Source: Paraphysomonas bandaiensis (taxonomy: Eukaryota; Protista; Chrysophyceae). Taken from it: DNA of 64,000 bases. Within the stretch, counting starts at the first letter, position 1. The number at the start of each line of letters is the position of its first letter. Both the position numbers and the translations under genes were made by a program. Where the stretch lies: contig CBFFRP010000380.1 in assembly GCA_965644295.1 (NCBI GenBank), positions 1 to 64,000 on the forward strand, read 5' to 3'. Below, piece by piece: positions 1 to 55,150 of the stretch. The notes beneath the pieces are model-generated. The model was not told the DNA's origin. It saw nothing but the letters and a program-made list of their open reading frames with translations, and searched no databases.

Positions 1-3000
1 GTCGAGGACAAAGACGTATTCTTATGCTGATATTGAAAATTGATCTTGCATACTATGGATGAGGTTACTTGAGATAACTCCCCAACAGCTATGTAAGATA
101 CAACCTCCTCGGTCAAATGAATATTTTCTTCTGTTGTGCACTGATCCTCTTGTAGTGATATTTGAAAAAATGTAGATGTCATATTCCAAGCACGAACACT
201 CGTTGAAGCTGCCATGCTTATCGCGGATGATACCATTCCAAACACAGACACAGGATACTCATATGAGCCGTCAAAAAGTATAGTTGTGGATGCACTTGTC
301 GCAGAGTCAAATTGCCCCATTTCAAATGAAATGCGTTCACTGCAATTCAGAACTCCACTTCCGTCGAATGCCATGTAGGCAAGTGTCTCAGCAAGCGACA
401 TGTTGTAATAGGACAAATCATCAGAGTCGTGGGGAACTAACACAAATCTAGAAAACCCAAGACCATGGACTAATGCCCGCACAGTCAAAAAGCGATCATA
501 CACAAGACTCTGAATTTGATTAATTGCACCAACTAATGTGCCATCCTCGAAGCGACATGACTTCGTTAATGTCTCACAACCCACAGGATAGTTAAACCGG
601 ATAAAATTATACAGCTCATTGCTATTGTCTACTCGCGTGATATCACCACTTCCAACCATGAAATAATATCCGGAAATATTGAAAGCACCTTTCTCCACAA
701 CCATCCAAGACACTTCGAGAGTATCGCTAAGAGACCTTGGTATAAACCATTCTTTCGAACAATAACTATCATTGGCATGATATAACTTCACGTCGAAAGA
801 AACACGACCCATAGATGTAGCACTTCTCACTCTTGACACCAAGGGAGATTGATTACTTTCTTCGGATGGAATGCTTACAAATACAACTGCATCCTGGAAT
901 GAAGCGAACTCAGTAGAAACACTTTCCCAATACTGGTCAGAAACATTCACTCGACCCACTTCCATCCATATCTCAGTCACGAATGATTTGGATACCATAT
1001 CAATCACATCACCTACAAAACACATCACTGTTACAATTAAAGTACAGATATGATATCATCACGTACCAATTGTGCCCGTAGGGCTCATCGACATCGATGG
1101 TGCAACAGTAGGAACCCCAGTAGGCAAAATGCTAGTAGGAAAATATGTAGGCTTTGTAGTTGGAAGTGAGCTTGGCACCAATGTTGGTGTTGGTGATGAC
1201 ACCTCACTTGGAGGCACAGACGACAAGAAGTCAGTCGGTTGTAAACTCGGCGGTGATGTCGAGGACAAAGACGTATTCTTATGCTGATATTGAAAATTGA
1301 TCTTGCATACTATGGATGAGGTTACTTGAGATAACTCCCCAACAGCTATGTAAGATACAACCTCCTCGGTCAAATGAATATTTTCTTCTGTTGTGCACTG
1401 ATCCTCTTGTAGTGATATTTGAAAAAATGTAGATGTCATATTCCAAGCACGAACACTCGTTGAAGCTGCCATGCTTATCGCGGATGATACCATTCCAAAC
1501 ACAGACACAGGATACTCATATGAGCCGTCAAAAAGTATAGTTGTGGATGCACTTGTCGCAGAGTCAAATTGCCCCATTTCAAATGAAATGCGTTCACTGC
1601 AATCCAGAACTCCACTTCCGTCGAATGCCATGTAGGCAAGTGTCTCAGCAAGCGACATGTTGTAATAGGACAAATCATCAGAGTCGTGGGGAACTAACAC
1701 AAATCTAGAAAACCCAAGACCATGGACTAATGCCCGCACAGTCAAAAAGCGATCATACACAAGACTCTGAATTTGATTAATTGCACCAACTAATGTGCCA
1801 TCCTCGAAGCGACATGACTTCGTTAATGTCTCACAACCCACAGGATAGTTAAACCGGATAAAATTATACAGCTCATTGCTATTGTCTACTCGCGTGATAT
1901 CACCACTTCCAACCATGAAATAATATCCGGAAATATTGAAAGCACCTTTCTCCGCAACCATCCAAGACACTTCGAGAGTATCGCTAAGAGACCTTGGTAT
2001 AAACCATTCTTTCGAACAATAACTATCATTGGCATGATATAACTTCACGTCGAAAGAAACACGACCCATAGATGTAGCACTTCTCACTCTTGACACCAAG
2101 GGAGATTGATTACTTTCTTCGGATGGAATGCTTACAAATACAACTGCATCCTGGAATGAAGCGAACTCAGTAGAAACACTTTCCCAATACTGGTCAGAAA
2201 CATTCACTCGACCCACTTCCATCCATATCTCAGTCACGAATGATTTGGATACCATATCAATCACATCACCTACAAAACACATCACTGTTACAATTAAAGT
2301 ACAGATATGATATCATCACGTACCAATTGTGCCCGTAGGGCTCATCGACATCGATGGTGCAACAGTAGGAACCCCAGTAGGCAAAATGCTAGTAGGAAAA
2401 TATGTAGGCTTTGTAGTTGGAAGTGAGCTTGGCACCAATGTTGGTGTTGGTGATGACACCTCACTTGGAGGCACAGACGACAAGAAGTCAGTCGGTTGTA
2501 AACTCGGCGGTGATGTCGAGGACAAAGACGTATTCTTATGCTGATATTGAAAATTGATCTTGCATACTATGGATGAGGTTACTTGAGATAACTCCCCAAC
2601 AGCTATGTAAGATACAACCTCCTCGGTCAAATGAATATTTTCTTCTGTTGTGCACTGATCCTCTTGTAGTGATATTTGAAAAAATGTAGATGTCATATTC
2701 CAAGCACGAACACTCGTTGAAGCTGCCATGCTTATCGCGGACGATACCATTCCAAACACAGACACAGGATACTCATATGAGCCGTCAAAAAGTATAGTTG
2801 TGGATGCACTTGTCGCAGAGTCAAATTGCCCCATTTCAAATGAAATGCGTTCACTGCAATCCAGAACTCCACTTCCGTCGAATGCCATGTAGGCAAGTGT
2901 CTCAGCAAGCGACATGTTGTAATAGGACAAATCATCAGAGTCGTGGGGAACTAACACAAATCTAGAAAACCCAAGACCATGGACTAATGCCCGCACAGTC

Positions 3001-6000
3001 AAAAAGCGATCATACACAAGACTCTGAATTTGATTAATTGCACCAACTAATGTGCCATCCTCGAAGCGACATGACTTCGTTAATGTCTCACAACCCACAG
3101 GATAGTTAAACCGGATAAAATTATACAGCTCATTGCTATTGTCTACTCGCGTGATATCACCACTTCCAACCATGAAATAATATCCGGAAATATTGAAAGC
3201 ACCTTTCTCCACAACCATCCAAGACACTTCGAGAGTATCGCTAAGAGACCTTGGTATAAACCATTCTTTCGAACAATAACTATCATTGGCATGATATAAC
3301 TTCACGTCGAAAGAAACACGACCCATAGATGTAGCACTTCTCACTCTTGACACCAAGGGAGATTGATTACTTTCTTCGGATGGAATGCTTACAAATACAA
3401 CTGCATCCTGGAATGAAGCGAACTCAGTAGAAACACTTTCCCAATACTGGTCAGAAACATTCACTCGACCCACTTCCATCCATATCTCAGTCACGAATGA
3501 TTTGGATACCATATCAATCACATCACCTACAAAACACATCACTGTTACAATTAAAGTACAGATATGATATCATCACGTACCAATTGTGCCCGTAGGGCTC
3601 ATCGACATCGATGGTGCAACAGTAGGAACCCCAGTAGGCAAAATGCTAGTAGGAAAATATGTAGGCTTTGTAGTTGGAAGTGAGCTTGGCACCAATGTTG
3701 GTGTTGGTGATGACACCTCACTTGGAGGCACAGACGACAAGAAGTCAGTCGGTTGTAAACTCGGCGGTGATGTCGAGGACAAAGACGTATTCTTATGCTG
3801 ATATTGAAAATTGATCTTGCATACTATGGATGAGGTTACTTGAGATAACTCCCCAACAGCTATGTAAGATACAACCTCCTCGGTCAAATGAATATTTTCT
3901 TCTGTTGTGCACTGATCCTCTTGTAGTGATATTTGAAAAAATGTAGATGTCATATTCCAAGCACGAACACTCGTTGAAGCTGCCATGCTTATCGCGGATG
4001 ATACCATTCCAAACACAGACACAGGATACTCATATGAGCCGTCAAAAAGTATAGTTGTGGATGCACTTGTCGCAGAGTCAAATTGCCCCATTTCAAATGA
4101 AATGCGTTCACTGCAATCCAGAACTCCACTTCCGTCGAATGCCATGTAGGCAAGTGTCTCAGCAAGCGACATGTTGTAATAGGACAAATCATCAGAGTCG
4201 TGGGGAACTAACACAAATCTAGAAAACCCAAGACCATGGACTAATGCCCGCACAGTCAAAAAGCGATCATACACAAGACTCTGAATTTGATTAATTGCAC
4301 CAACTAATGTGCCATCCTCGAAGCGACATGACTTCGTTAATGTCTCACAACCCACAGGATAGTTAAACCGGATAAAATTATACAGCTCATTGCTATTGTC
4401 TACTCGCGTGATATCACCACTTCCAACCATGAAATAATATCCGGAAATATTGAAAGCACCTTTCTCCACAACCATCCAAGACACTTCGAGAGTATCGCTA
4501 AGAGACCTTGGTATAAACCATTCTTTCGAACAATAACTATCATTGGCATGATATAACTTCACGTCGAAAGAAACACGACCCATAGATGTAGCACTTCTCA
4601 CTCTTGACACCAAGGGAGATTGATTACTTTCTTCGGATGGAATGCTTACAAATACAACTGCATCCTGGAATGAAGCGAACTCAGTAGAAACACTTTCCCA
4701 ATACTGGTCAGAAACATTCACTCGACCCACTTCCATCCATATCTCAGTCACGAATGATTTGGATACCATATCAATCACATCACCTACAAAACACATCACT
4801 GTTACAATTAAAGTACATATATGATATCATCACGTACCAATTGTGCCCGTAGGGCTCATCGACATCGATGGTGCAGCAGTAGGAACCCCAGTAGGCAAAA
4901 TGCTAGTAGGAAAATATGTAGGCTTTGTAGTTGGAAGTGAGCTTGGCACCAATGTTGGTGTTGGTGATGACACCTCACTTGGAGGCACAGACGACAAGAA
5001 GTCAGTCGGTTGTAAACTCGGCGGTGATGTCGAGGACAAAGACGTATTCTTATGCTGATATTGAAAATTGATCTTGCATACTATGGATGAGGTTACTTGA
5101 GATAACTCCCCAACAGCTATGTAAGATACAACCTCCTCGGTCAAATGAATATTTTCTTCTGTTGTGCACTGATCCTCTTGTAGTGATATTTGAAAAAATG
5201 TAGATGTCATATTCCAAGCACGAACACTCGTTGAAGCTGCCATGCTTATCGCGGACGATACCATTCCAAACACAGACACAGGATACTCATATGAGCCGTC
5301 AAAAAGTATAGTTGTGGATGCACTTGTCGCAGAGTCAAATTGCCCCATTTCAAATGAAATGCGTTCACTGCAATCCAGAACTCCACTTCCGTCGAATGCC
5401 ATGTAGGCAAGTGTCTCAGCAAGCGACATGTTGTAATAGGACAAATCATCAGAGTCGTGGGGAACTAACACAAATCTAGAAAACCCAAGACCATGGACTA
5501 ATGCCCGCACAGTCAAAAAGCGATCATACACAAGACTCTGAATTTGATTAATTGCACCAACTAATGTGCCATCCTCGAAGCGACATGACTTCGTTAATGT
5601 CTCACAACCCACAGGATAGTTAAACCGGATAAAATTATACAGCTCATTGCTATTGTCTACTCGCGTGATATCACCACTTCCAACCATGAAATAATATCCG
5701 GAAATATTGAAAGCACCTTTCTCCACAACCATCCAAGACACTTCGAGAGTATCGCTAAGAGACCTTGGTATAAACCATTCTTTCGAACAATAACTATCAT
5801 TGGCATGATATAACTTCACGTCGAAAGAAACACGACCCATAGATGTAGCACTTCTCACTCTTGACACCAAGGGAGATTGATTACTTTCTTCGGATGGAAT
5901 GCTTACAAATACAACTGCATCCTGGAATGAAGCGAACTCAGTAGAAACACTTTCCCAATACTGGTCAGAAACATTCACTCGACCCACTTCCATCCATATC

Positions 6001-8164
6001 TCAGTCACGAATGATTTGGATACCATATCAATCACATCACCTACAAAACACATCACTGTTACAATTAAAGTACATATATGATATCATCACGTACCAATTG
6101 TGCCCGTAGGGCTCATCGACATCGATGGTGCAACAGTAGGAACCCCAGTAGGCAAAATGCTAGTAGGAAAATATGTAGGCTTTGTAGTTGGAAGTGAGCT
6201 TGGCACCAATGTTGGTGTTGGTGATGACACCTCACTTGGAGGCACAGACGACAAGAAGTCAGTCGGTTGTAAACTCGGCGGTGATGTCGAGGACAAAGAC
6301 GTATTCTTATGCTGATATTGAAAATTGATCTTGCATACTATGGATGAGGTTACTTGAGATAACTCCCCAACAGCTATGTAAGATACAACCTCCTCGGTCA
6401 AATGAATATTTTCTTCTGTTGTGCACTGATCCTCTTGTAGTGATATTTGAAAAAATGTAGATGTCATATTCCAAGCACGAACACTCGTTGAAGCTGCCAT
6501 GCTTATCGCGGATGATACCATTCCAAACACAGACACAGGATACTCATATGAGCCGTCAAAAAGTATAGTTGTGGATGCACTTGTCGCAGAGTCAAATTGC
6601 CCCATTTCAAATGAAATGCGTTCACTGCAATCCAGAACTCCACTTCCGTCGAATGCCATGTAGGCAAGTGTCTCAGCAAGCGACATGTTGTAATAGGACA
6701 AATCATCAGAGTCGTGGGGAACTAACACAAATCTAGAAAACCCAAGACCATGGACTAATGCCCGCACAGTCAAAAAGCGATCATACACAAGACTCTGAAT
6801 TTGATTAATTGCACCAACTAATGTGCCATCCTCGAAGCGACATGACTTCGTTAATGTCTCACAACCCACAGGATAGTTAAACCGGATAAAATTATACAGC
6901 TCATTGCTATTGTCTACTCGCGTGATATCACCACTTCCAACCATGAAATAATATCCGGAAATATTGAAAGCACCTTTCTCCACAACCATCCAAGACACTT
7001 CGAGAGTATCGCTAAGAGACCTTGGTATAAACCATTCTTTCGAACAATAACTATCATTGGCATGATATAACTTCACGTCGAAAGAAACACGACCCATAGA
7101 TGTAGCACTTCTCACTCTTGACACCAAGGGAGATTGATTACTTTCTTCGGATGGAATGCTTACAAATACAACTGCATCCTGGAATGAAGCGAACTCAGTA
7201 GAAACACTTTCCCAATACTGGTCAGAAACATTCACTCGACCCACTTCCATCCATATCTCAGTCACGAATGATTTGGATACCATATCAATTACATCACCTA
7301 CAAAACACATCACTGTTACAATTAAAGTACAGATATGATATCATCACGTACCAATTGTGCCCGTAGGGCTCATCGACATCGATGCGTTCACTGCAATCCA
7401 GAACTCCACTTCCGTCGAATGCCATGTAGGCAAGTGTCTCAGCAAGCGACATGTTGTAATAGGACAAATCATCAGAGTCGTGGGGAACTAACACAAATCT
7501 AGAAAACCCAAGACCATGGACTAATGCCCGCACAGTCAAAAAGCGATCATACACAAGACTCTGAATTTGATTAATTGCACCAACTAATGTGCCATCCTCG
7601 AAGCGACATGACTTCGTTAATGTCTCACAACCCACAGGATAGTTAAACCGGATAAAATTATACAGCTCATTGCTATTGTCTACTCGCGTGATATCACCAC
7701 TTCCAACCATGAAATAATATCCGGAAATATTGAAAGCACCTTTCTCCACAACCATCCAAGACACTTCGAGAGTATCGCTAAGAGACCTTGGTATAAACCA
7801 TTCTTTCGAACAATAACTATCATTGGCATGATATAACTTCACGTCGAAAGAAACACGACCCATAGATGTAGCACTTCTCACTCTTGACACCAAGGGAGAT
7901 TGATTACTTTCTTCGGATGGAATGCTTACAAATACAACTGCATCCTGGAATGAAGCGAACTCAGTAGAAACACTTTCCCAATACTGGTCAGAAACATTCA
8001 CTCGACCCACTTCCATCCATATCTCAGTCACGAATGATTTGGATACCATATCAATTACATCACCTACAAAACACATCACTGTTACAATTAAAGTACAGAT
8101 ATGATATCATCACGTACCAATTGTGCCCGTAGGGCTCATCGACATCGATGGTGCAGCAGTAGGA
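1..8164. repeat. Tandem array of 1257-bp units (about 5.8 full-length units in the window plus one 766-bp deleted unit), >99% identical
   Basis: ORFs recur every 1257 bp (1059, 2316, 3573, 4830, 6087). Only scattered SNPs were seen (347, 1954, 2742/5256, 4818/6075, 4876, 7290/8056). Confidence 0.98.
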
Positions 8165-9540
8165 GTCCTTGTTGGTACTTTAGTTGGTAGGACTGTTGGT
8201 TTCGCAGTAGGCTCCACAGATGGTGGTATCGTAGGTTCACTAGTTGGTGTCAACGTAGCTGTAGGGAAACTTGTAGGTAATCCAGTGGGGAGTGAAGTCT
8301 TTCTCGATGGTGTAGCTGTGGGAACTACGGTAGGATTGAAAGACGATGATGGAGTACTTGTTGGGCATTCACTGGGAAAATATGTCGGCTCTTGTGTTGG
8401 TATTGATGTAGGCGGCAGAGTTAGTGAATTGTATAGAGCTGCACACTTTGTACACGACTTGGAGTTGTGCTCGCCCACGACTAGTATGAAAACAACCTCA
8501 GACGTAGTGTGTAAAGTTTCTTCGTCCACACACTGATCTTCTTGGGTGATAATTCCGGAACCCACAACTGTGCGAGAAAATGTCCTAAGACCAGTGCTGT
8601 CGGTTAAACTAGTCGCACTGCCTATAGTTCCAAAAATACCAGGCAGGGATGTGAGTGTGAGATTAAATTTAATCCAGTGAGCTACATCATTTACAGCAGG
8701 GATAACTTGTGCCTCAAGCGCTAGTCCACCACTGCAAGCTGCAACGAAATGCGATTTGAATGAAAGGTACGCTAGTGTTTCACTGAGATTATTCATCGAA
8801 TAATAAGATGCATCCTGGGAATCGTGAGGTTGTAAAACCGCTCGAAAAAATCGCAAGTTAGCCACCTTGGTACGCGGAATAAGAAGTCGATTGTAGACCA
8901 CTGTTTGGAGTTGGAGTATAATACCGACAGTTGAATCAGGTGCGTAGGCACAGTTTTCAGAATTAGATTCACAGCCAGTTGGGAAATTAAATCGAACAAA
9001 ATTATTAGGATTTGAAATATCATCGTCTTCACGAGTTATCGGGCCATTCCCTACGACGAACATACTCCCAGATATATTGTACACACCATTTTCCGATACA
9101 ATCCAAGAAAGAAATACTGAAGGTGATATTGCCTGTGGAATATACCACTCCTTCGAACAAAAGCTGTCGTTTGCTTGATACAACCGAGTTTCGAAGGATA
9201 CAAGACCCGACGACACTACAACATTTCGAACACGAGCAATGACTGGGAAGCCATCAGTTGATACATTCCCACCAATACTTGGTAGACTAACAAAAACACT
9301 TGCGTTTGAAAAAATATCTGCAGAAGTTGAAACTTGTATCCACCTTTGATCATCAGCATTCGTGACGCCAGCTTCAATCCAGGGTGATGTCAACACTGTT
9401 TTCGCTCTCATATCTATTGGGTCGAGAGAAGTAAAATTATCACAATGTTCTGGAAATTCTTGAGCAGAAATAGAATGGACAAATTCAAATGGTCCAAAAT
9501 ATAATAAAAATATACTTTTTACAATAACATCTGGTGACAT
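1..9540 (-). CDS. Giant secreted/surface repeat protein: signal-peptide exon (9540-8118) plus tandem 1203-nt exons, each a ~340-aa triple beta-rich (H-type-lectin-like) module with a Pro/Thr/Ser stalk; runs off the window edge
   Basis: ATG at 9540 gives MSPDVIVKSIFLLYFGPFEFVHSISAQ (signal-like). Identical 54-nt introns GTACGT...TTTTGTAG lie at 8117-8064, 7351-7298, 6094-6041, 4837-4784, 3580-3527, 2323-2270 and 1066-1013. Splicing joins ...GTI-G-DVIDM in frame. The exon at 8063-7352 is frameshifted by a deletion. Confidence 0.75.
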
Positions 9541-10374
9541 GTTTCGCAAATATGCAAATATTGAACTCAAAGATCACTGGAGTTTAGCACTACGATACTG
9601 TCGTTTAGAACCCGGATATCTGATATCATATCTAACTCAATGTTGTTACACACACGAGACAGAGCTATATTTAAGGAGCTGAAAGGTGAGGATAGGAAAT
9701 AGAAAACACTATCCGACAATCAACATAATTTGTAGCAATACTGTAATGACGGGTGTTTAGATTCATCTAAAGAGGCTGAATTATACACACATGAGGAATA
9801 ATCTGACATGTAATGCCATGATTATATACTTGATGGTTGCGTTGTAATATACATGCCTGATAGATCGTATAATATACAGGGGGATTCAACATATCAGAAG
9901 AGCGGTTTTGAACCTTCAAGATCCCAAATCCCACCCAATAAAATCACACACATCTGCCTCCAGATGAGTGAGTAGTATCTGTATCTGTGTTGGTGATGAT
10001 GGAGATGAGATCTACAGATGTAGAGTACCGTATACAGTATATACTGCTGTATATAGCAGAAAGTTGGACAAAAAACTTCAATTATTGCAGATGTTTTTTT
10101 GCCGGTATCTGTATCATACAATTTAGCTGCAGTATGGAGTACGTACATTGTACAGTACTTGCCGTGCACACATATAGTCTGTTGTCAAGACATATACAAT
10201 ATACCGCCGTATACCCTATATACTGCCTCCTACTCCATTGCTGTTAGACTATACATGCATAGTTGTATTGCAACAATGAACGTCTCTGTTATATAATTGG
10301 CGAAAGAAAAAGAATCAATACTACTTATTCTCACCCCTATCGTTGCTCACTCGTTATATTATATTGATTTCAAC

Positions 10375-11698
10375 ATGGCTCGGAAACTGGATGAATCGGA
10401 AAAAAAACAAATGAATCTAGATACTCTTCAAAAAGAAGATCCCGATATTACTGATATACTGGGTAACGCCTCGCACACTGCGATATATCGCTTCAACAAT
10501 GGATCATGTCAGTGGGAAAGGGTGGGCGTTGAAGGAGCTGCTTTTGTTGTAGCAGCTTCAGTGCGTCCCCTATTTAGGCTAGTCGTCTTTAATAAATTAG
10601 GTGAAATATGGTAGAATATGAGGTTCGATTGTGCTGAGATAATTTTATAGATGTCAATAGCTACAATTTGGACTTGTCAGAAGTGAATAAAGTGAAACTT
10701 CAACCACCGTATTTAATGCTGCGGCTAAACAATGAGGTAAGGGATTGGCAATCTATATCTCCGTGTTAAGAAAGATATAGTCCGACGAACACCATTCAAT
10801 AATGGGCCTGTGGTTTCATGAGAACTCTGATAGGAATGCTGTCATGGAAGCTATTCAAAGGTTAGTAAAATATTTAAAGTATAATGGTACAATGGACACA
10901 TAACGTTTCATACACGATAGTATTTTATATCTTTGGTGCACCTTATGAACCTTTGACCTTTTCGTTGCAACACAGCTGCATGAATCGCGCTCGTGAATCA
11001 AGATCCGCACCGTCACAGAACCCTGTGGCTGCATCGAAGTCGAATCAGCTACTGCATGCTATTTCACCTAGAAAGGAGACTAAGTCAGCTCCTCCGGAGA
11101 AACGAGGTTGGGCTCACACATTTCGTACGCTATCTGACTGAACTCATTATTGCTTTCATTATGTATATGTAACAATATATGACTCATTGTGTCATTTTAG
11201 TTGACATCCCAAAAAGTGACCCCGCAGATGCCGATGATTTCTTGAGAGGCCTCTCGGAACGAACAACATCATTTCACACCTCAACTCACGTGAATGGCAA
11301 ACCCAAATCGAATGCAGGTGATAGACTTCTCGCGCCGATTGTAGTCCTGTTTAGACTAAAATTTTGATAACTATGCAGATACCAGTGAGAGTAGTATTCC
11401 ATCCTCCATCTCCTCTCACAATGTGGTGAAGGCATCAGATAAATCCAAGGCGATATTGTCTGCCCTGACTTCGAAGTCTGCTCAAGCGATTGGAAGTGCA
11501 TCAACCGGTGACGGCTTTCTGACGGACAAAGAAATAACAGCTGTTTCTGAGAAGAAATCAATCCTTGTGTTGTCGACTATTGAAAGCAAGCAAGTGGATG
11601 TCAAACCGACATCTAAAAACACAAGTCAGGTGTTACTTATTGCCCCATCTGACCTGACCGGAAGGAAGCGAGAAATTCCAAAGCTTTCAGCGTTGTAA
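10375..11698 (+). CDS. DCP1: mRNA-decapping enzyme subunit 1 (EVH1 domain), multi-exon
   Basis: MNLDTLQKEDPDITDILGNASHTAIYRF...WERVGVEGAAFVV...FRLVVFNKL, then PPYLMLR and IMGLWF in later short exons: typical Dcp1 N-terminus followed by a low-complexity tail. Confidence 0.88.
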
Positions 11699-13106
11699 TA
11701 TAATAGTGTTATAATGAAATTGTTGCCTTATGGTTGCGTGTAGTGTTCCGTGCAACGATTTGCCAATAGTACACATTGTATAGGCCACAACTCAAGTGTA
11801 AATCATACACGAAAGCCTTTTGAAATGGTTGCCAGCTCCTAGCTGGTACTCAATATAGAGTGAATAGTTTTAACGTAGATACTATATCTTAATATGACTT
11901 TTCATTGAGTCTGAAAGAAAAGCATAATTCAACCTCGTCATAAATTTATGAAACTTAGTTCACCAATGATTCAACTGCCTCGTCAAAACATACTCTACCT
12001 ATCAATCGATGAATACCAGCTAAACTTACGTATAATTCACTAGACTTCAGCTTGCAATCAAATGTAAATTGGGCGTTTTTTTTCCATACCACAACGTCAT
12101 TTATCCCATATATGTTAACGTTCCTATTATTTAAAGAGATTAGGAGTTCTATTAAAGTAATTCAGTACAGAGAAGAAGATACTGTTGAGAGAGAACATAG
12201 GGCCGACAGACTTAGCTGAACAACATACTCCCTGCCCATATTGATGTCCTCCACTATTGTGAAGACTAAATGGTCCACCTAAGAAACGATGCATTGGTTT
12301 GATAATTGGAATTCACTGCCATGATAGCTATTTGTGAGCACAACCTATAACTCGGTTGTTTTGATGAGATCAACCCCAGAATTCATAGTGACGAGACATT
12401 TCAAACATTTCCACTTGCGGTAAGGAATATCTCTCTGCTGAAACGTGGTTACCATCAGAATATTGATGCAATCAAGTAATTATTGTTGCAATTAGTAAAT
12501 CTATGGTTAGATTTAATCAAAACAGAATCTCGTATTTGAGTTTAGGTTGATTATAGCAAAGGGGCATGTAAGTATCTGACCCATTTCACAGAGTAAGAAC
12601 GTCTAGCAAATAAGTATATCTGTATTTGAGTAAAAATCAATCACTACAACTTTACTACGCTTCCTTATACTCTTTATACCGCCTGACCTTCACAGCATAT
12701 ACAAGTATCTATGCAAGATAACGATAGAGTAGTATTCACAGGGACAACTTTTTCTTTCATTATTCGAGGCATAACTGAAATGAAAAGTTAGATCATATAT
12801 GATACTTGCTGGTTGAATAGGCAGGTGTAAGACACAACAGTGAATGCACTGTGTACTATATACGCAAAGATTGACTTGACCAAGAGTTTGCCAATCATAT
12901 TATATTATATATTCCTAAAATCTTGGGTTTTCAGTTTTTTTCCCCAGGTTTTAGGAGATATCCTGATATCCTCCACATCACAATTTCCACAAACCACTCG
13001 AAAACCTCAAGAATGTTCCAACGTGTCCGAAGTTGCAGCCGTTAAGCTCCTCTCAGTGTCCATGAAAGCATAATTTCCACAACTCCCGGATATATAGAGT
13101 AATACC

Positions 13107-14393
13107 ATGGAGGGCGACTGTGTTAATATCTCTACGGATAGCCGTGATGCATCCGACTGCGACGATTGCGAGAGGAAGCTGTGTTACATCGTCAGGATTA
13201 AATCGAAGCTTCCAATTCCAAATGCAGACAATATCGTATTGGCTGAGATTAACGGTATCAGCTGGCAGTGTATTATCAAGAAAGATGAATTCCAAGAAGG
13301 TGATCTGGCCATATACTACGCCATTGACAGTGTGCCAGACTTCTCGGATCCGAACACTGCATTAGTAAAATCCAGAGGCAACAGAATCAAGACCATCAAA
13401 TTGAGGTATGATGCGTTATTTCGACTTATCTTCAATTCTGATGGTAGAATGTAATATAGAGGGGTGATTTCGCAGGGACTACTTGCTCCCCTATCTTGGC
13501 TCGCAGATAGGGGTCACTCCATAGACTCTCTCTCCGAGGGTGAAGACGTCACTGACCGAATGGGGGTTACCAAGTATATACATGAGGAAGAAGAAGCCCA
13601 ATATGATCCTTACTTTAACCCTGATCAGCTTTCCTCCAGCCTTGGAATGCGAACACCATTCCCTGCAGGTCTTCATTGTGAACCTACATATGATGCATGT
13701 ATAATCCATTGTTCTCTCACTCATGCATAGGGGTGCCCAAGACAAATGAAAATCGCTTACAAGAAAACCCTCGCGTGCTCGAATATATAGAAGGGAGGAA
13801 TATTGTCATCACTCGCAAGGAAGACGGGTGCTCTGCTACGTACGTACTTCGTAACGACGAGTTCAGCATATGTGGTCGAAACTTTACATTGCTGAATTTG
13901 ACCGCACAATCCCAGCACTACTTTGAGATTGAGGATAGATATAATATTCAGTCAGGAATGAAAAAATTAGGACGAGAGCTGGCTATTCAAGGAGAGATTG
14001 TAGGGCCTAAAATTAATGGCAATAGGATGAAGTTGTCCGGGAATGATTTCAGGGTATTTAACATTAAGGACCTCGTGACGGAGTGCTATCTTTCCTGGGA
14101 GGAGGTCGAAAGTGTGTGCGCATCTTTGGGTCTACATACGGTTCCCGTCATATACAAAGGTACAAACTTATTTGTGTACATGTATTGCAATATAGCGTGG
14201 TAAATATGCGATGTACGCAGGTATTTCTTCAAACCTGGATCTTACCGTTGAGGGTATGTTGCGCGTAGCCGACGAGCAGCGCTATGCAAAGAACTTAATC
14301 GCTGAAGGAATAGTAGTTAAGACCAATGATGGTGGGAGAAGATGCAGCTTTAAGGTCATATCCAACAAATACCTCCTGAAGTATGATAGATAA
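13107..14393 (+). CDS. ATP-dependent RNA ligase, Rnl2-like DRB0094 family; 4 exons
   Basis: N-terminal PIPNADNI...WQCIIKKDEFQEGDLAIYYAIDS and KLRGVISQGL, followed by nucleotidyltransferase motifs TRKEDG, QGEIVG, FRVFNI, EGIVVK and FKVISNKYLLK. Introns 13406-13459, 13669-13730 and 14160-14220 restore the frame. Confidence 0.88.
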
Positions 14394-20158: not shown

Positions 20159-20423
20159 TATTAGGATTCAGCTTAATATATGATTGTATCTGTGAGTTAT
20201 AATGTTCAATGAAATACACCATGAACTGAATTAGAGAGAGTATCTGTCGAAGATACGTGATCGTCATCATAACGTCGTCATTATCAGTTACACTTCTAAC
20301 TATTCCGTTGTGCATGATAGTACGTTCTATATTGTTATTCATAATTTTCACTCTATCGTGTTCATTACTTACACTCTAATAATCACAACATTGTTTTACT
20401 ATTATAAAGATCAATTCTTTATT
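20159..20423 (+). repeat. 5' LTR
   Basis: Identical by eye to 25633-25897; starts TATTAGG, ends CTTTATT. Confidence 0.95.
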
Positions 20424-20433
20424 TGGTAGCGAG
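20424..20433 (+). promoter_or_regulatory. Primer-binding site, probably for initiator tRNA-Met
   Basis: TGG-T-A-GCGAG directly after the LTR. It is complementary to CCA, discriminator A73 and U72, the iMet signature; the tRNA identity is inferred. Confidence 0.65.
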
Positions 20434-23400
20434 ATGTCAGTTCAAGTTACAAGTTACGACTCAACCGACTCGGATTCGACAACCGACAAGCGAAAGGACT
20501 CAATGCCAAAATTCGATGCGAAGAACTTCTCCAGGTGGCAGAAGAAGTGCCGTGCATGGTTCTATCGCAAGCCTAAGATCGTTTATACTCTACAGAACGA
20601 TCATCCAATTGAGCCTGAAGCAGGAGAAAACTCAGATGACGAGGACTACCAGTATCGACTCGAACAGTATCAGGATGCGAAACGATATTATGATGAAGGT
20701 AATAACTACCTATGGTCAGTCATTGCAAGCTCTATCATTGGTCAGAATGAAGAGGCTGAAGGGATTTTGGAGAACGTCCCCGATGGAGACGGTAAAACCG
20801 CCTGGACGGACTTGCTCAACCACTTCAAAGAAAAAAACGACTAACGATGTAATCACCGATCTGATTGGCCAGTTTCAGAGCATAAAAATCAAAAAAGGTC
20901 AGTCGATAATCAACTTTCTTGACGCTGTCGAAAAGCTCCGAAACAAGCTGATTAATTATGGTCATCGGATAAGTGACCAAGATCTCATATCACGCATTCG
21001 ACAAGGCCTGGTATCCAAAGAAAATATGACGTATCGTGAACTGGCGATCAACCTGCAGATGCACCCTATCGATGACTACAAAACACTCATACGCAGACTA
21101 CGCGGATTAGGAAGCTCGTCTGTTGGAATGCTCTTGTCAAGCAACGAAGAAACAAAAACCGACAGTATTCAGCTTGCAGCCTCAAAACCCCCGTTTTCCC
21201 GAAATAAAGTGAATTCTAAACGCAAAAAGGGGACATCTTTCAGAAACCGTTCCAATAAACCGAAACATGACAAGAGAGCTGACAAGGACATTAAGTGTTT
21301 CCGATGCGATGGAAAAGGACACATCGCTTCAGAATGCAAACACTCATGGGAAAGGATCCAACAAATGAAGAGTTCCTCTGGAAACAAATCAACCAGTAGG
21401 AAATTCAAAAAAGTTAGATTCCAGACCCACCAGAGCACTGAAAACGACGACTCCGACCAGTTTGCAGATTATGAAGACAGTGGTCCATTACAACAGAAAG
21501 GACGAGACTTCGGAGGAGTCGGATATCCAACAAACGACGAAACAAACTTCGTTTTTGATCAAGAAGCCGGAATGGGAACCCTTGATTCTGGCTGCACAGT
21601 CTCCATTACACCTGAAGCCGGATACATCACCAATTATGAGGAATGCCTCACCGACATTCAAACAGCTAAGTCAGGATCGACTATGACCTCTTCAGGACAT
21701 GGAAGACTTGGTATTATCCCCAAGTGCAAGCACGTGGACCATGCTTCAAGGACACTCGTGTCCATCAGCCAATTAGATGACCTAGGGTATAAAATCTTGT
21801 TCGGAAACCAATCAGTTGAGATATATAAAGATGAAATACTGCTATCAAAGGGTAAGAGAGTTGGAGGCCTATATGAAATTCCGTTAACAGACCTCGGTAC
21901 TCCTATTGACGTATCCCACCTTGCTTCAACTGCTTCAGGCCCACTCGCAACTCTAGCACATAAGAGATTGGCACATTCTTCAATTGGACTCATACAGAAA
22001 GCTGTACAGTCAAAATTAGTAACGGGTATTAAGTTAACGAAGTCGGAGATGAATGCTACTTCTTTACCGGGTGGCCTATGTGATGGTTGTGCTAGTGGTA
22101 AATCTCATCGCCGAAAACATAGACACGCTATCAGACAAATGCTGCTCAAGCGTGTAAGAAGAGCAAATGAGCTGGGGGAGCTAGTAGTAGCCGATTTTTC
22201 TGGACCCCATGCACCAGAGGCAATCATTACTGGCAACCGTTACATACTCGGGATGACAGATGTAGCTTCCAGACACCAATGGGACTCCTACGGACCAACG
22301 AGAGATGAAGATTTCGTCATCCAATCCATCCAGAAAGTTGTCATGTATCTACATAGTAAAGGCAAACGACTACAACATTATCATGCGGATGGGGGGAAGG
22401 AGCTGGTATCAAGAAAAGTTCTAGAGTATCTTCAATCAATAGGGGCTACATGGACTTTCAACTCCCCGTATACCCCCGAGGATAACCCATTCCAAGAGCG
22501 ATCATGGCGGACAACTAAAGAACGAGCACTCAGCAGCCTTATCGACTCTGGACTCCCACCGAATTTCTGGGAACAAGCCTCAAGGGCGACAATACACATC
22601 AAGAACAGGTTACCGTGTCAAACAGCTAAAGGATTTATGTCCCCACTCCAATTCATCGAAAACGAAATACCAGACTTGAGTTATGCCAGAATATGGGGAT
22701 GTAAATGCTTTGTGAATATCGATTCCAGTCTCCGAAAGAACAACTGGGACAGACATAGCTGGCCTGGGTATTTTATGGGCTATCGAGAGGATGGTCCTGG
22801 ATATATAGTCTTTGTTCCCGCATTAAGAGATTTTGTTATATCAGGACATGTATTTTTCAACGAATGTGTTCCACCAGCGGATAAGAGATATTTTAAGGAG
22901 ATAAATGAGATCTTCAGGGAGAATGAGACCACCAGGACAGTAGAAAGTTTCAAATATCTCATAGGTCTAGCTCATGTAGATCCAGACGATGGATTAACAT
23001 ATGTAACGACTCAAATAAAGCTCAGAAAAGGATTAATCGCAGCGTATCGTGGTCTAGTGGACGACAGCGGTGACAAGACACGACTCATCCAGCTCGAAGA
23101 CCCCATTCATGCTGCAGACGTCGAAAGATATACTGAAGACTACATTGAACTCAAAGCAGTTGGTCTCAAATGTAATACTTCTCGATCGAAAAATCCAATA
23201 CATAAATCCAGCAAATCAGATCGAGACCCCGATACGGTTAATGGATCTCCAGCGCCAGGCGCTACTTCCAGGGGGAGTGGCGTGAATCTAAGACATCATG
23301 ATGCCGCGCAGGAGAGAATCAGCAGCCATCGGTGTGAACCTACCCACTCCGATGCAAAGATAGCGAAGACTCGCCCTCCGAAAAAATTCAATGGGAATCT

Positions 23401-25429
23401 AGTGCCGAATCCGGCACCACACGGTCAAGTGGATCGTGTGCGTCAGCGTGTGGCCAAACGCTGCAACAAGCCTGCTGATTCATCGGGAGATTGGAAAAAT
23501 CAGGGTACACCTGAAGGGCCAAGTAAGGTCCGTGCTACAGCAAAACAACAATTTTTAGCTGGTAGAAAGAGTGTTCTCCGAAGCAGGAGAATGGCCAGGA
23601 AACGGGTAATTGTAAATATACACAAACTAGGTGATGGTGTATATACATGTGATGTAAATGCTAAACATGTAGTAAATCATATGGCACATGACACACAATG
23701 TATATCAAAATTACATACAAACAATATTGATATTGTTATGCATGCTATCAGTAATTGCGATGACATTGACGAGCTAACCGATACACCAAAGAGTGTTCAA
23801 GATGCTATTTCAGGTAAATATAAACAGCAGTGGATCGATGCTATCAATAGAGAAATATCCACTCTTCAGAGGAAAGGGTGCTGGAGATACACTGCGTTAC
23901 CACCTGGAGCAAGAGCCATAAAGGGGAAACTCATATTCAAAATAAAAAGAAAACAGAATGATATCAAATTCAAGGCTCGACTAGTCGCACAGGGTTTTAC
24001 TCAAATCCAAGGCATCGATTACAATGATACATACAGCCCCGTCGCGAAGGCTACATCACTACGTACAATTATTGCCCTTTCGACTATTATGAAACTCAAA
24101 TTGCACCAAATCGATTTCACAACTGCGTACATCAATGCTGACCTCGAAGAGGACATATACATGCATCCCCCTCCTGGCATGGACGTCCCTGACGGAAAAG
24201 TCCTCAAACTGATGAAAAGCATCTATGGTCTAAAGCAAGCAGGTCTTAACTGGTATAAGTGCTGTACAAATTTTATGCTAGATATGGGTTTCACCAGACT
24301 AATATCTGACCCGTGTATATTCAAAAAGCAGATTAATGGCAGGATTATGCTAATAGCCATGTATGTGGACGATATTATTATAGCATCTACATCCGACACT
24401 GATATCCAACAATTCAAAGACCATTTATCCAAAAAGTTCGAAATTACGGATCTCGGACTCCTAGATTATTACTTGGGCATCTCCATTCATCAAGATTTTG
24501 ACAAAAATATCACAACTCTCAGTCAGGAGCAATATGTCAGAAAACTACTGGACAAATTCAACATGTCCGACAGTAAACCCATGTCAACACCTATGTTACT
24601 GTCTTTCAACTATGATTTACATGAATACAATCATCTTTCAGAGTCAAATCAAAGTTATGTTCAGAATTTCCCCTACAAGGAGCTCATAGGTTCCCTGATG
24701 TATCTAGCTGTATGCACTCGACCGGATATCGCCTATGCAGTCAATACTCTTGCCAGATTTTCTGATATGCCTAATCTAACTACCTGTAATGCTGCGTTAC
24801 ATGTTCTTAGGTATCTCAAAGGCACTGCTAAGCAAGGATTGATATATTCTGGATCCCACATAACATTATCAGGATACTGCGATAGCGATTGGGCACGGTG
24901 TCACCTCACTCGACGGTCCACTACAGCTTTTACATTCTTCATAGGTAATTGTCTTATATCATGGCAATCTCGATTACAGACAACTGTGGCATTGTCATCT
25001 ACTGAAGCTGAGTATATGGCCTTATCGTCAGCAGCTCAGGAAGCATTATGGCTACGCTCTTTATTATCAGAAATTGGTTTCAAACTTCCATTCTCAACAA
25101 CTATTTGGTGCGATAATAAAGGGGCAGTCCAATTATGCTACAATCCTACTCATCATCGTCGTACGAAACATATTGCGATACGGTATCATTTCATTCGAGA
25201 AAATATTGCCGAAAACCAATTGACTGTTGACCATATTCCCACCACGTCAATGTTAGCCGATCTTCTCACGAAACCACTAGGCGCAACTAATTTTCTTCAA
25301 TTGCGAACTACATTGATGGGGGGAGCTGGGTTCGACATCCCATCCAGCAACAACAGAAAGCGATCAACAATATCAGAGACCCCTAAATCACAATTAACAA
25401 GCCACAAGCGACCTAGGTGGCTAGTTTGA
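20434..25429 (+). CDS. Copia Gag-Pol polyprotein with one frame break at the A7 run (20831-20837)
   Basis: Gag N-terminus at 20434-20844. In the long frame: zinc knuckle CFRCDGKGHIASEC, protease LDSGCT, HKRLAH..CDGC, integrase ADFSGP/HADGGKE/FQERSWR, RT YVDD, RNase H CDSDW/EAEY/CDN/ADLLTK. Confidence 0.93.
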
Positions 25430-38116: not shown

Positions 38117-38723
38117 GTTTGAGATAGTGTCCACTGCTGTATATAGTCTCAACTACTCTCTATGTATACACAGAGAAATTCTAATGGAAAACGCTAATAG
38201 CACACATGTGTCATATGTCCAATACAAGTACTATTACCACACCATGTGATGCTGTTTTATATGTCTGAATGAGATCATAGAAAGAATGGAGGTGAGTGTA
38301 GTTCAAATTCCATAGCAAACAATTCCATATATATGTTCTATAAGTATGTAATTCTATAGAGGTGTATGGTGTATGGTGTACGGCGGTGTACGGGGTCAAT
38401 GTATGTGTTCTATAAACTAAACTGTAGCCGGATATATGTACGCAGTTGGTAGAGTATACAGTACTGCTGCTGGTCCTTTCTGACCATATGGTGGGATGGG
38501 AATATCGAACTCGAAGAGTGAGCTCAAGATGACGCTCACCAAATCCAGGTAGAGAATATACATATACATATATCTATATATCAAGGAGGTATACTTGCTA
38601 CAGCAGTAGAGTTATCTGTGTCGCTTGTTAGTCCTCCTCTAGAACAAGAGTGCCATAATATATGAATCATATAATTTGATCACGTGAAAAATTGCACTCT
38701 GAAAGATATTGTGGAAGACATTC

Positions 38724-41700
38724 ATGTTACGTTTGTTGTTAGTGTTTAGTATTATTGTCGCTACAGCGGCTGTGTGTTGTCCTCCTAACTTTTATCCTTA
38801 TAACACTAATGACTACTGTTATTATATTACTGGTTCACCACGAACATATCAGGAAGTCCATACTTTATGTAGCCAACGCGGAGGCTACATGGTATCTATT
38901 GGAACTTGGGAAGAGCAAAGCGCATTGATTAGTGCTTTGAATTGCTTTCATAACAGGCAAGATGTTTACATTGGTGCCACTGATATCAATGCTGAAGCCA
39001 CCTGGATATGGGATAATGGGGAACCAGTAGCGCCCTATGTCAATTGGGATGGTGGCTCAGCGCCGAGTAATGCTGCGAAGGATTGTGCTTATATTCCAAG
39101 CACGCAACAGGCTTGGAATGACGTAGATTGCACTGAACGCAAAGCTTATGTATGTGAGGCTGATCCGCTTGTATCCTGTGTTTCTTCTCCAACGCCGTCC
39201 CCAACAGTTCAATGTCCTAGTGGTTTTTCACCGTATGGGAATTTTTGTTATTTTTTTGCTTCTAGTTTTAAAAAGTATTCCGAAGTGGCGAATGCCTGCC
39301 AAAATTTGGGTGGTTATGTACTCTCCATCAATTCGGCGGAGGAGCAGGAGCAGCTTGTACTGGCGTTGGAGGGACAAGGCACATGTAACAGTTATCGATC
39401 AAAGTTTTATATTGGGTATTCGGATGCTGCTGCTATTGGCACGTGGATGTGAGTACTTGTCACATAGTCATATTCTTACAATATTTCTAATCAATTAACT
39501 GTCAATTTTACCATGTGTCGTTTACAGATGGGATGATGGAACAGGAAGTGGTTCTTTTTCATTTTGGAAAGATGGCACTGACTTGTCTGTTAACGGTAAT
39601 TATGATTGCGCCGTATTCCGCAGCGACAATACCTGGGAAATTGAAAACTGTAATACATATTTACAATTTTCCTGTGAAGCAGATCCCCTTGTGATTGCTA
39701 CATCGAGTCCGACACTATCTCCTACAAGGTTCCCAACTACAAACCCTACTGGAAACCCTACCGAAAATCCCACGTTATCACCTACTCGTGAACCGACACT
39801 ACTTCCAACTCGCGCACCTACCGTGTCTCCAACATGTAATCCTTCCTCTATTCCTACCAACATTCCTACCTCCCTTCCTACTCACACTCCTTCGTATACA
39901 CCTACCTCTCTCCCTACTCACACTCCTTCGTATACACCTACCTCTCTTCCTTCCCACACTCCGTCCTCTACACCTACCACTCTTCCATCCAGCACTCCCA
40001 CTTATACACCTTCCTCTCTTCCTTCCCGCACTCCGTCCTCTACTCCTTCCTCTCTTCCTACTCACATCCCGTCCTCTACTCCTTCCTCTCTACCATCCTA
40101 CACCCCGTCCTCTACTCCTTCCTCCCTTCCTACTCACACTCCCTCCTCAACTCCTACTACTCTTCCTTCCCACACTCCGTCCTCTACACCTTCCTCTCTT
40201 CCTACTCACACTCCGTCCTCTACACCTACCACTCTTCCATCCAGCACTCCCACTTATACACCTACCTCTCTTCCTTCCCACACTCCGTCCTCTACACCTA
40301 CCACTATTCCTACTCACACTCCCTCCTCTACACCTTCCTCTCTTCCTTCCCGCACTCCGTCCTCTACTCCTTCCTCTCTACCATCCTACACCCCGTCCTC
40401 TACTCCTTCCTCCCTTCCTACTCACACTCCGTCCTCTACCCCTACCACTATTCCTACTCACACTCCGTCCTCTACTCCTTCCTCTCTACCATCCCACACC
40501 CCGTCCTCTACTCCTTCCTCCCTTCCTACTCACACTCCGTCCTCTACACCTACCACTCTTCCTACTCACACTCCCTCCTCTACTCCTTCCTCTCTTCCTT
40601 CCCGCACCCCGTCCTCTACTCCTTCCTCTCTTCCTACTCACACTCCGTCCTCTACTCCTTCCTCTCTACCATCCCACACCCCGTCCTCTACTCCTTCCTC
40701 CCTTCCTACTTACACTCCCTCTTCAACTCCTACTACTCTTCCTTCCCACACTCCGTCCTCTACACCTTCCTCTCTTCCTTCCCACACTCCGTCCTCTACA
40801 CCTACCACTCTTCCATCCAGCACTCCCACATATACACCTACCTCTCTTCCTTCCCACACTCCCTCCTCTACCCCTACCACTATTCCAACTGACACTCCCA
40901 CATACACACCTACTTCCCTACCTTCCCGCACTCCCTCCTCTACTCCTAGCACTCTTCCAACCAGCTTACCCTCTTCACCTCCTACCTCTCTTCCTACCCA
41001 CAGTCCGTCCTCTACACCTACTACTCTTCCTACCCACAGTCCGTCCTCTACACCTACCTCTCTTCCTACCCACAGTCCGTCCTCTACCCCTACCTCCCTT
41101 CCAACTGATACTCCCACATGTACACCTACCTTTTTTCCTACCCACACCCCGTCCTCTACTCCTACCACTCTTCCATCGAGCTTACCCTCTTTGCCTCCTA
41201 CCTCTCTTCCTACTCTTACTCCTAGCTCCCTTCCAACTGACACTCCCACATATACACCAATCACTATTCCTACCCTCACTCCCTCTTCTATTCTTACCCA
41301 CACTCCGTCCTATAGTCCTGCCTTAATTCCATCTCAGTCCCCTTCTTATGTTCCTACTCCATCCTCACTTCCATCTCGTTTTCCGTCAAATGGTTCAACA
41401 TCTACTCCAGCTGATACACCGACAGCTGTACCTACCTATATTCGACTTAATTCACCTTCATATATTCCAACCTCTACTCAATCTGATGCGCCGATTTCCA
41501 AACCAACGTTTCTTCCATCTGATGAACCAACTATTATTCCAACTCGTTTACCATATTCTCCTTCTGATACAACTGTCGTTCCAACACATATGCTTACTGA
41601 ATATCCTACATACGTACCTAATATATTTCCAACATCGATTCCTAGTTTTCAAGCCGCTTCTCCCTCCTCATTTTCCCCTACAGCTATACCCTCCATGGGT

Positions 41701-55114: not shown

Positions 55115-55150
55115 CAGAGAGAAGATATTATATGAGTAGATATTGCAGAG

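What the first reader, a model, noticed from the sequence alone, without database searches (positions are those of the whole stretch)
1..9540. The 1257-bp tandem ORFs are symmetric exons of one expandable giant surface protein, not separate genes
Seen: every unit boundary on the minus strand reads ATT G|GTACGTGATGA...TGTTTTGTAG|GT GAT GTG, a 54-nt GT-AG intron. Exons are 1203 nt (401 codons), phase 1-1, and only the divergent first exon (9540-8118) has a signal-like N-terminus. Inference: one gene encodes beads-on-a-string modules (globular module plus Pro/Thr stalk). Module number could change without frameshift, either by unequal crossover at DNA level or by exon skipping at RNA level, giving a length-variable adhesin/lectin system in a protist.
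Basis: partly seen in the sequence, partly recalled or inferred. Interest (0 to 1): 0.8.

Follow-up and report, generated by a model that had tools for sequence, protein, structure and literature searches.

The report
Tandem lectin-module exons, one gene
A marine alga (probably a diatom) carries a head-to-tail array of almost identical 1.2-kb exons, each separated by the same 54-base intron, that are spliced into one very long message for a beads-on-a-string, lectin-like secreted or surface protein; in this assembly the second exon has a frame-breaking deletion.

Summary
On the minus strand a divergent first exon (9540-8118) is followed by seven repeat exons. They are separated by seven copies of one 54-nt GT..AG spacer, in phase 1. 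Five exons are 1203 nt and 99.8% identical. The exception is exon 2 (8063-7352), which is 712 nt. A 491-nt deletion shifts its frame, so the fully spliced message stops at codon 712.

Contigs of three probable RNA runs remove exactly 8117-8064 and close into a cycle of 1203 nt. A DNA run and two ocean metagenome contigs keep the intron and cycle at 1257 nt. Unit-to-unit splicing is therefore shown, provided those runs are RNA. The link from exon 1 to the array is inferred.

The module belongs to an unannotated family of 485 relatives. Most have a signal peptide, one module, a Pro/Thr stalk and a C-terminal membrane anchor. Some have 2, 3, 5 or 8 modules in one intronless reading frame. Fold and profile evidence point to H-type-lectin-like beta-sandwiches.

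The gene's 3' end lies outside the window. Copy-number variation is only hinted at. This is a new variant of a known kind, of moderate interest. The scan had already noted the exon 2 deletion on this same window.

The parts
9541..9832 (-). probable 5' untranslated region
   Evidence: Contigs of run X5 cover up to 9832 and no further. DNA run X9 continues upstream.
8118..9540 (-). Exon 1: signal-like N-terminus, a divergent module (44.7% identical to the repeat module) and a 103-aa Pro/Thr/Ser stalk. Its last 38 nt are identical to the unit tails.
8064..8117 (-). Intron 1, 54 nt, GT..AG, phase 1
   Evidence: Skipped exactly in contigs of X5, X11 and X13; retained in DNA run X9.
7352..8063 (-). 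Exon 2, 712 nt: a repeat unit with a 491-nt frame-shifting deletion (unit positions 683-1173)
   Evidence: The deletion junction was not seen in any of the four runs laid. Its ORF is not on record.
7298..7351 (-). Intron 2
6095..7297 (-). Exon 3, 1203 nt (329-aa globular module plus 71-aa stalk)
6041..6094 (-). Intron 3 (C>A variant)
4838..6040 (-). Exon 4, 1203 nt
4784..4837 (-). Intron 4 (C>A variant)
3581..4783 (-). Exon 5, 1203 nt
3527..3580 (-). Intron 5
2324..3526 (-). Exon 6, 1203 nt (the unit used for searches and for the model)
2270..2323 (-). Intron 6
1067..2269 (-). Exon 7, 1203 nt
1013..1066 (-). Intron 7
1..1012 (-). Exon 8, partial: the array runs off the window

Best explanation
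The region is the 5' part of one gene on the minus strand. Exon 1 supplies the start codon, a signal peptide, an old paralogous module and a stalk. It is followed by a young tandem array. Each 1257-bp DNA unit is one 1203-nt phase 1-1 exon plus one 54-nt spliceosomal intron. The intron lies inside the duplicated unit, so it was copied along with it. Splicing strings the exons into one reading frame. Each exon adds a roughly 330-aa cysteine-containing globular module, built of H-type-lectin-like beta-sandwiches, and a roughly 70-aa Pro/Thr/Ser stalk that is probably O-glycosylated and extended.

By analogy with relatives, the product is a secreted or type I membrane-anchored multivalent glycan-binding protein, whose reach and avidity scale with module number. 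Unequal crossover or gene conversion keeps the units near-identical and can change their number in frame. In the haplotype assembled here, exon 2 carries a 491-nt deletion. That allele stops at codon 712 unless exon 2 is skipped or the deletion is an assembly fault.

Shown: the anatomy, removal of the intron between units, and multi-module relatives. Inferred: the link from exon 1 to the array, anchoring, sugar binding and copy-number change.
For: Anatomy.

Splicing: X5, X11 and X13 each have a contig that skips exactly 54 nt with GT..AG ends. The X11 contig is 1233 nt, which is 1203+30. The X5 and X13 contigs of 1054 and 209 nt overlap by 30 nt at both ends and close a 1203-nt cycle. The X9 DNA contig is 1287 nt, which is 1257+30, and keeps the intron. 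These three runs behave like RNA: they have no cover upstream of 9832, very uneven depth, and a 1780-nt paralogue contig of identical length in all three.

The tandem DNA unit with its intron also occurs in Tara and another metagenome (L008, L009; lag-1257 overlap without mismatch).

Units lack a hydrophobic N-terminus.

Relatives: 485 hits. P0037 has 8 modules that are 97-99.6% identical in one 12.3-kb intronless ORF, then a long stalk, LRR, a membrane segment and a tail. P0038 has 5 modules, P0039 has 3. Most long relatives have one C-terminal hydrophobic segment.

Fold: the model has pLDDT 75.7. It matches an Atlas cluster of bacterial proteins, 11% of whose members carry Pfam H_lectin, at TM 0.71/0.86 over 310 residues. 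The feature search gives 0.96 to H_lectin clusters. PDB matches include pyocin fibre foot, gp53, discoidin I and Helix pomatia agglutinin at Z 3.8-5.2. Proteins found by the family profile carry Pfam H_lectin above threshold.
Against: Exon 2 is out of frame, so as assembled the long protein cannot be made.

All runs laid were contigs labelled 'RNA?' by guess, and the tool marked X11 'probably DNA'.

With 31-mer contigs and a 38-nt shared tail, splicing of exon 1 itself onto the array cannot be told from unit-to-unit splicing. A minor intron-retaining branch could have been dropped.

The 3' end, and with it any anchor, is outside the window.

Pfam H_lectin does not hit the module itself. No PDB sequence match was found. 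PDB fold Z scores are modest.
Confidence: 0.78

Rival explanations
1. The three runs with the joined form are DNA. Their strain has an intronless array like the relatives P0037 and P0038, so the 54 nt would be a strain-specific insertion whose splicing is not shown.
For: The tool labels the kind as a guess and marks X11 'probably DNA'. Intronless multi-module ORFs exist in relatives.
Against: All three runs lack cover upstream of 9832, while DNA run X9 has it. Depth differs about 10-fold between neighbouring contigs. A 1780-nt contig of identical length recurs in all three. Two metagenomes, run X9 and the window all carry the intron at 99.8% identity. Each spacer has GT..AG ends and an in-frame stop.
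Confidence: 0.07
2. The locus in this strain is a dead or truncated allele. The 491-nt deletion in exon 2 is real, and the message ends at codon 712 (exon 1 plus two thirds of a module) and is probably degraded. The array downstream is untranslated here.
For: The frame shift and the stop directly after the exon 2/3 junction. The 3-nt microhomology at the breakpoints is typical of a genuine deletion.
Against: No contig in four other runs shows the deletion junction; all continue into the full unit. The short ORF is not on record anywhere. The downstream units are intact and nearly identical, with no other lesions. Skipping exon 2 restores an open frame of 2816 codons. A second haplotype may be intact.
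Confidence: 0.35
3. Each unit is a separate gene of 407 codons that starts at the ATG inside the spacer, as prokaryote-style gene callers annotate it (P0001).
For: An in-frame ATG lies 16 nt before the acceptor. The ORFs were called as such in metagenome assemblies.
Against: There is no signal peptide, whereas all full-length relatives have one. Only 54 nt separate the units, leaving no room for a promoter or terminator. The spliced cycle in RNA contigs removes that ATG.
Confidence: 0.02

Closest known systems
Unnamed multi-module relatives from marine metagenomes (P0037 with 8 modules, P0038 with 5, P0039 with 3)
   Same: Same module family, 35-45% identical. Same beads-on-a-string layout of module plus Pro/Thr stalk. 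Modules within one protein are near-identical (97-100% in P0037 and P0038). N-terminal signal peptide.
   Different: Their arrays are single uninterrupted ORFs. Here every unit carries a 54-nt intron and the first module is an old paralogue. P0037 shows the C-terminal stalk, LRR and membrane anchor that cannot be seen here.
H-type lectins (Pfam PF09458: Helix pomatia agglutinin, discoidin I C-domain, SLL-2) and the related foot domains of R-type pyocin and phage tail fibres
   Same: Small beta-sandwich fold for residues 114-216 and 217-311 (Z 3.8-5.5, rmsd 1.9-3.1 A, about 80-93 residues). The whole module matches predicted bacterial proteins, part of which are annotated H_lectin. The family profile finds proteins that carry PF09458.
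   Different: The Pfam model does not hit the module. Known H-type lectins are homotrimers of one domain (my own knowledge), whereas here several sandwiches sit in one chain. Sugar binding is untested.
Copy-variable coding arrays made of whole exons, such as the kringle IV-2 repeat of human LPA (my own knowledge, not checked here)
   Same: Near-identical tandem DNA units that each contain complete exon(s) and intron(s) and stay in frame, so protein length follows copy number.
   Different: The unit here is one exon with a 54-nt mini-intron. The organism is an alga. Polymorphism is not yet demonstrated.
Giant repetitive Pro/Thr/Ser-rich adhesive and mucin-like proteins of diatoms (CaTrailin4 at 894 kDa, CaFAP1; bioRxiv 10.1101/2023.03.06.531300)
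   Same: Very large secreted diatom proteins in which Pro/Thr/Ser-rich stretches alternate with cysteine-containing domains and tandem repeats.
   Different: Different domains (choice-of-anchor A, other repeats). No sequence relation was found and no exon-cassette structure is reported.

Membership tests
Spliceosomal GT-AG intron | GT..AG termini and precise removal from RNA | tested here: met
   All 7 copies have GT..AG termini. An exact 54-nt skip is seen in contigs of X5, X11 and X13 and not in DNA run X9. Caveat: the RNA label of these runs is a guess.
Spliceosomal GT-AG intron | Reading through is not possible (in-frame stop), while removal restores the frame | tested here: met
   Unspliced reading stops at codon 476. 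Spliced exons 3-8 stay open.
Unnamed signal peptide, module, Pro/Thr stalk (and anchor) family of marine protists | Significant profile match and conserved residues (six Cys, NDS.C and EDQC motifs) | tested here: met
   E-values from 1e-83 down to 1e-21. There are 23 invariant columns and 485 relatives.
Unnamed signal peptide, module, Pro/Thr stalk (and anchor) family of marine protists | C-terminal membrane anchor after the stalk | not testable with these tools
   The 3' end lies beyond position 1 of the window. Most long relatives have one C-terminal hydrophobic segment.
H-type lectin (PF09458) | Match to the Pfam model above its gathering score | tested here: not met
   No hit at E up to 1 for the unit, for exon 1 or for 15 relatives.
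H-type lectin (PF09458) | H-type beta-sandwich fold | tested here: met
   PDB matches at Z 3.8-5.2 to discoidin I, HPA, SLL-2, pyocin foot and gp53. Atlas match at TM 0.71/0.86 to a cluster in which 11% of members carry H_lectin. Scores are modest for PDB and good for the Atlas.
H-type lectin (PF09458) | Sequence link through intermediates | tested here: met
   P0152, P0174, P0175, P0180 and P0181 match the family profile (E 1e-16 to 1e-23, summed over repeats) and carry PF09458 at 30-140 bits. In P0175, P0180 and P0181 the best-scoring Pfam stretch lies within or overlaps a profile-aligned stretch.
H-type lectin (PF09458) | Binding of GalNAc-type sugars at a site between three domains | not testable with these tools
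   Needs a binding assay or a solved structure.
Copy-variable exon-cassette array | Different unit numbers in different individuals or strains | tested here: inconclusive
   The window holds at least 7 repeat exons. The contig depth ratio of unit to exon 1 is about 3.8 in DNA run X9 and about 10 in X5 and X11. The tool warns that contig depth is not a copy number.

The most novel reading that the evidence does not exclude
Identical symmetric exons let the cell tune protein length at the RNA level. Skipping any number of the 1203-nt exons stays in frame. The out-of-phase exon 2 would act as a gate: included, it gives a 712-aa product or decay; skipped, it gives the giant protein. Retention of intron 1 gives a 476-aa single-module secreted form like most relatives. 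One locus would then produce a ladder of lectin valencies.
Probability: 0.1. Interest if true: 0.8.

Novelty: new variant of a known kind. Interest (0 to 1): 0.5.

Why it matters
It corrects the annotation. Gene callers split this locus into 407-codon orphan ORFs, and they do so in ocean metagenomes too.

It defines an unannotated, widespread family of marine protist surface proteins built from H-type-lectin-like modules on Pro/Thr stalks. In at least three lineages the module has recently multiplied to 5-8 or more near-identical copies.

Such multivalent lectins are candidates for cell-cell, cell-bacterium or cell-polysaccharide contacts in phytoplankton.

The exon-plus-mini-intron cassette shows how an intron is multiplied passively by tandem duplication. 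It also gives a clean system for studying copy-number-driven protein length variation. None of this overturns current ideas.

Tried and rejected
- **JGI metagenome scan.** One scan for the 18-nt donor flank gave six chance hits in bacterial genes and nothing related.
- **Exact look-ups.** The exon 1 product and the short exon 2 ORF are not on record.
- **Foldseek against PDB with the whole model.** Nothing at E below 0.001. Only a local 86-residue match to the pyocin fibre.
- **Profile against PDB sequences.** No match.
- **Internal repeat test.** hhalign of the three sub-domains was not significant; the best pair gave P 0.009.
- **Pfam on the module and 16 relatives.** No real family.
- **Papers.** Nothing on diatom H-type lectins or tandem exon duplication in diatoms.
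- **Earlier notes of the scan.** Searching them for the neighbouring window or for the organism gave no lead on the 3' end or the species.
- **Species.** Not identified, because run names are coded. A diatom is suggested only by the nearest eukaryotic Atlas cluster (Bacillariophyta) and by the marine and MMETSP sources.
Full report
**1. What is in the sequence**

ORF listing and direct reading of the minus strand show five identical-length ORFs of 408 codons, one shorter ORF and one divergent ORF of 486 codons between 1 and 9570.

A script located seven copies of a 54-nt spacer that begins GTACGT and ends TTGTAG. They lie at 8117-8064, 7351-7298, 6094-6041, 4837-4784, 3580-3527, 2323-2270 and 1066-1013. 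A search allowing 3 mismatches finds these seven and nothing else in the window, with none expected by chance. Two copies carry one C>A change.

The stretches between spacers are:
- 712 nt (8063-7352);
- five of 1203 nt each;
- a partial 1012 nt that runs off the window at position 1.

The full units differ from each other at 1-3 positions out of 1257.

Exon 1 runs from the first in-frame ATG at 9540 to 8118. It is 1423 nt, so it ends in phase 1. The 1203-nt exons are phase 1-1.

Each spacer contains an in-frame TGA, so unspliced reading ends after codon 476.

Only exon 1 has a hydrophobic N-terminus: Kyte-Doolittle 2.02 over 12 residues, against 0.74 for a unit start. That N-terminus aligns with the signal peptides of relatives.

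The last 38 nt of exon 1 before the donor are identical to the unit tails. The duplicated or converted DNA unit therefore spans the intron, and the intron was multiplied passively with it.

**2. The exception**

Exon 2 is a repeat unit with a 491-nt deletion. The common prefix is 682 nt, the common suffix 33 nt, and the microhomology 3 nt.

- With all exons joined, the frame shifts and a stop follows directly after the exon 2/3 junction, at codon 712.
- Leaving exon 2 out gives an open frame of 2816 codons up to the window edge.
I confirm the deletion and the frame shift. Its 'gate exon' reading is untested.

**3. Is the spacer spliced?**

One search for runs and one laying of four runs on 7200-10100 were allowed. 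All four runs are held as contigs.

*The three runs labelled 'RNA?' (X5, X11, X13, one species label).*
- Each has a contig that skips exactly 54 nt. With the cut shifted by 2, the ends are GT..AG on the minus strand, that is 8117-8064.
- In X11 the contig is 1233 nt, which is 1203+30: a circular 31-mer path with the period of the spliced exon.
- In X5 and X13, contigs of 1054 and 209 nt overlap by 30 nt at both ends and close the same 1203-nt cycle.

*The DNA run X9.*
- It has a 1287-nt contig, which is 1257+30, running straight through the intron.

*Independent DNA evidence.*
- Two metagenome assemblies, one of them from Tara Oceans, hold contigs of 1312 and 1376 nt.
- These wrap around the 1257-bp unit with the intron. 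They have no mismatch in the overlap and differ from the window unit at 1-2 positions.
- The tandem DNA arrangement is therefore real and present in the sea, and the joined form has the period expected for exon-to-exon splicing.

*Caveats.*
- The RNA label is a guess, and the tool marks X11 'probably DNA'.
- I read the three runs as RNA for three reasons (all). None of them covers anything upstream of 9832, while X9 does. Neighbouring contigs differ about 10-fold in depth. A 1780-nt contig of a paralogue recurs with identical length in all three.
- Exon 1 and the units share a 38-nt tail, so 31-mer contigs cannot show that exon 1 itself is spliced to the array. A minor intron-retaining branch could also have been dropped.
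- The link from exon 1 to the array rests on anatomy. There are only 54 nt between exon 1 and the first unit, the donor and flank are the same, and the units have no start or signal peptide of their own.

**4. The deletion in other data**

In all four runs the contigs pass unit position 682 into the full-length unit. No contig carries the deletion junction (loose ends at 7382). The short ORF is not on record.

Contigs drop rare variants, so this does not decide between a real allele and an assembly fault.

**5. What the protein is**

*No named family.* Pfam gives no family for the module, and only a weak PT-repeat hit in the stalk of exon 1.

*Close relatives.* The word-based search found 19 relatives at 29-47% identity. 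Most are 400-640 aa with a signal peptide, one module and a Pro/Thr stalk. They come from marine metagenomes and from MMETSP. The alignment shows 23 invariant positions, including six cysteines and the NDS.C and EDQC motifs.

*Wider family.* A profile of the globular part, scored against 1.84 billion representatives, found 485 relatives. Among them are proteins with several modules:

| Protein | Length | Modules | Identity among its own modules | Gene structure |
|---|---|---|---|---|
| P0037 | 4092 aa | 8 | 97-99.6% (nt) | one intronless 12.3-kb ORF on a 40-kb metagenome contig |
| P0038 | 2255 aa | 5 | 98-100% (aa) | intronless ORF |
| P0039 | 1404 aa | 3 | 68-80% (aa) | intronless ORF |
| P0040 | 936 aa | 2 | 70% (aa) | not examined |
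| P0041 | 6053 aa | 2 | 82% (aa) | not examined |

In P0037 the modules are followed by a roughly 440-aa Pro/Thr/Ser stalk, leucine-rich repeats, one membrane segment and an acidic tail.

Most long relatives have one hydrophobic segment near the C-terminus.

The module of exon 1 is only 44.7% identical to the repeat module. That is as distant as the modules of other species. The array is therefore a recent expansion placed behind an old paralogue.

*Fold.*
- The AlphaFold model has pLDDT 75.7. It is all-beta for residues 1-329 and disordered in the stalk.
- Sub-domains 114-216 and 217-311 match the foot of R-type pyocin fibres, phage gp53, a phage tailspike C-domain, the H-type domain of discoidin I, Helix pomatia agglutinin and SLL-2 (Z 3.8-5.5, rmsd 1.9-3.1 A over about 80-93 residues).
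- The whole module matches a cluster of 328-aa bacterial proteins at TM 0.71/0.86 over 310 residues. 11% of that cluster's members carry Pfam H_lectin. Several further H_lectin-bearing clusters also match.
- A language-model feature search gives the same clusters at 0.96.
- Five proteins found by the family profile carry PF09458 above threshold. In three of them (P0175, P0180, P0181) the best-scoring Pfam stretch lies within or overlaps a profile-aligned stretch.
- The Pfam model does not hit the module itself, and sequence-level internal repeats are not detectable.

I therefore call the module H-type-lectin-like, not a proven member of that family.

*Composition.* The stalk is 62% Pro+Thr+Ser. 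The module has seven N-x-S/T sites.

**6. How it most likely works**

- Shown: the anatomy, intron removal between units, and multi-module relatives.
- Inferred: one transcript from exon 1 through the array. It would encode a secreted or type I anchored protein in which lectin-like heads alternate with extended, probably glycosylated stalks.
- Many identical heads would give high-avidity binding to a repeated glycan. Stalks and unit number would set the reach.
- Near-identity of units in three lineages points to frequent unequal exchange or conversion, which can change unit number in frame.
- Contig depth ratios of unit to exon 1 are about 3.8 in DNA run X9 and about 10 in X5 and X11, against at least 7 repeat exons in the window. 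This hints at different numbers, but contig depth is not a copy number.

**7. Comparison and novelty**

The kind is known: modular lectin or mucin-like surface proteins, and copy-variable arrays of whole exons such as LPA kringle IV-2 (my own knowledge). Giant repetitive Pro/Thr/Ser-rich proteins are also described in diatoms (10.1101/2023.03.06.531300).

What is new is an unannotated family, its H-type-lectin-like module, and the fact that here each unit is a symmetric exon with its own mini-intron while relatives are intronless. No paper on this was found.

Surroundings are ordinary. A decapping-protein-like ORF and RNA-ligase-like ORFs lie upstream on the other strand, followed by a TPR gene.

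I rate this a new variant of a known kind, interest 0.5.

Noticed in passing
window 38709-46425 (+): A second large surface-protein gene. It has two C-type lectin domains (Pfam, E 7e-27), a likely intron of about 80 nt near 39447-39527, a 36-nt-period Pro/Thr/Ser repeat of about 36 copies (39865-41174), then a 2280-codon ORF with Cys-rich regions and a C-terminal hydrophobic segment.
   Followed up: partly
window 20423-25429 (+): An intact 1668-codon copia-type retrotransposon polyprotein (gag, protease, integrase, reverse transcriptase). It is also noted by the scan as s1-439379.
   Followed up: no
window 8516-8547: In the three probable RNA runs, a 1780-nt contig of a paralogue shares only these 32 nt (the EDQC motif region). 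Its depth is about 5-19 times that of exon 1. A single-module family member appears to be far more highly represented.
   Followed up: no
window 8110-8118 and each intron: The exon 1 ORF ends at a TGA inside intron 1. Retention of intron 1 would give a 476-aa protein with a signal peptide, one module and a stalk, which is the commonest architecture among relatives.
   Followed up: partly
unit positions 987-1016 (e.g. window 2511-2540): In X5 and X13 the 1203-nt cycle of contigs is broken at a second branch point, at the start of the stalk. This may be where the last module leaves the array for the 3' part of the gene.
   Followed up: no
window 55151-55596: A (GTAT)n microsatellite of about 111 copies lying between the chitin-synthase-like ORF (53615-55114, minus strand) and the start of a SET/MYND-like ORF (55143-57365).
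   Followed up: no
window 62872-63059: A tandem repeat of 37/70-nt period, 2.6-5.3 copies.
   Followed up: no
L001 (metagenome contig, gene 1631-13909): An eight-module relative (P0037) with modules 97-99.6% identical at DNA level, in a genome of 49% G+C. This shows a separate young expansion of the same module in another organism.
   Followed up: yes
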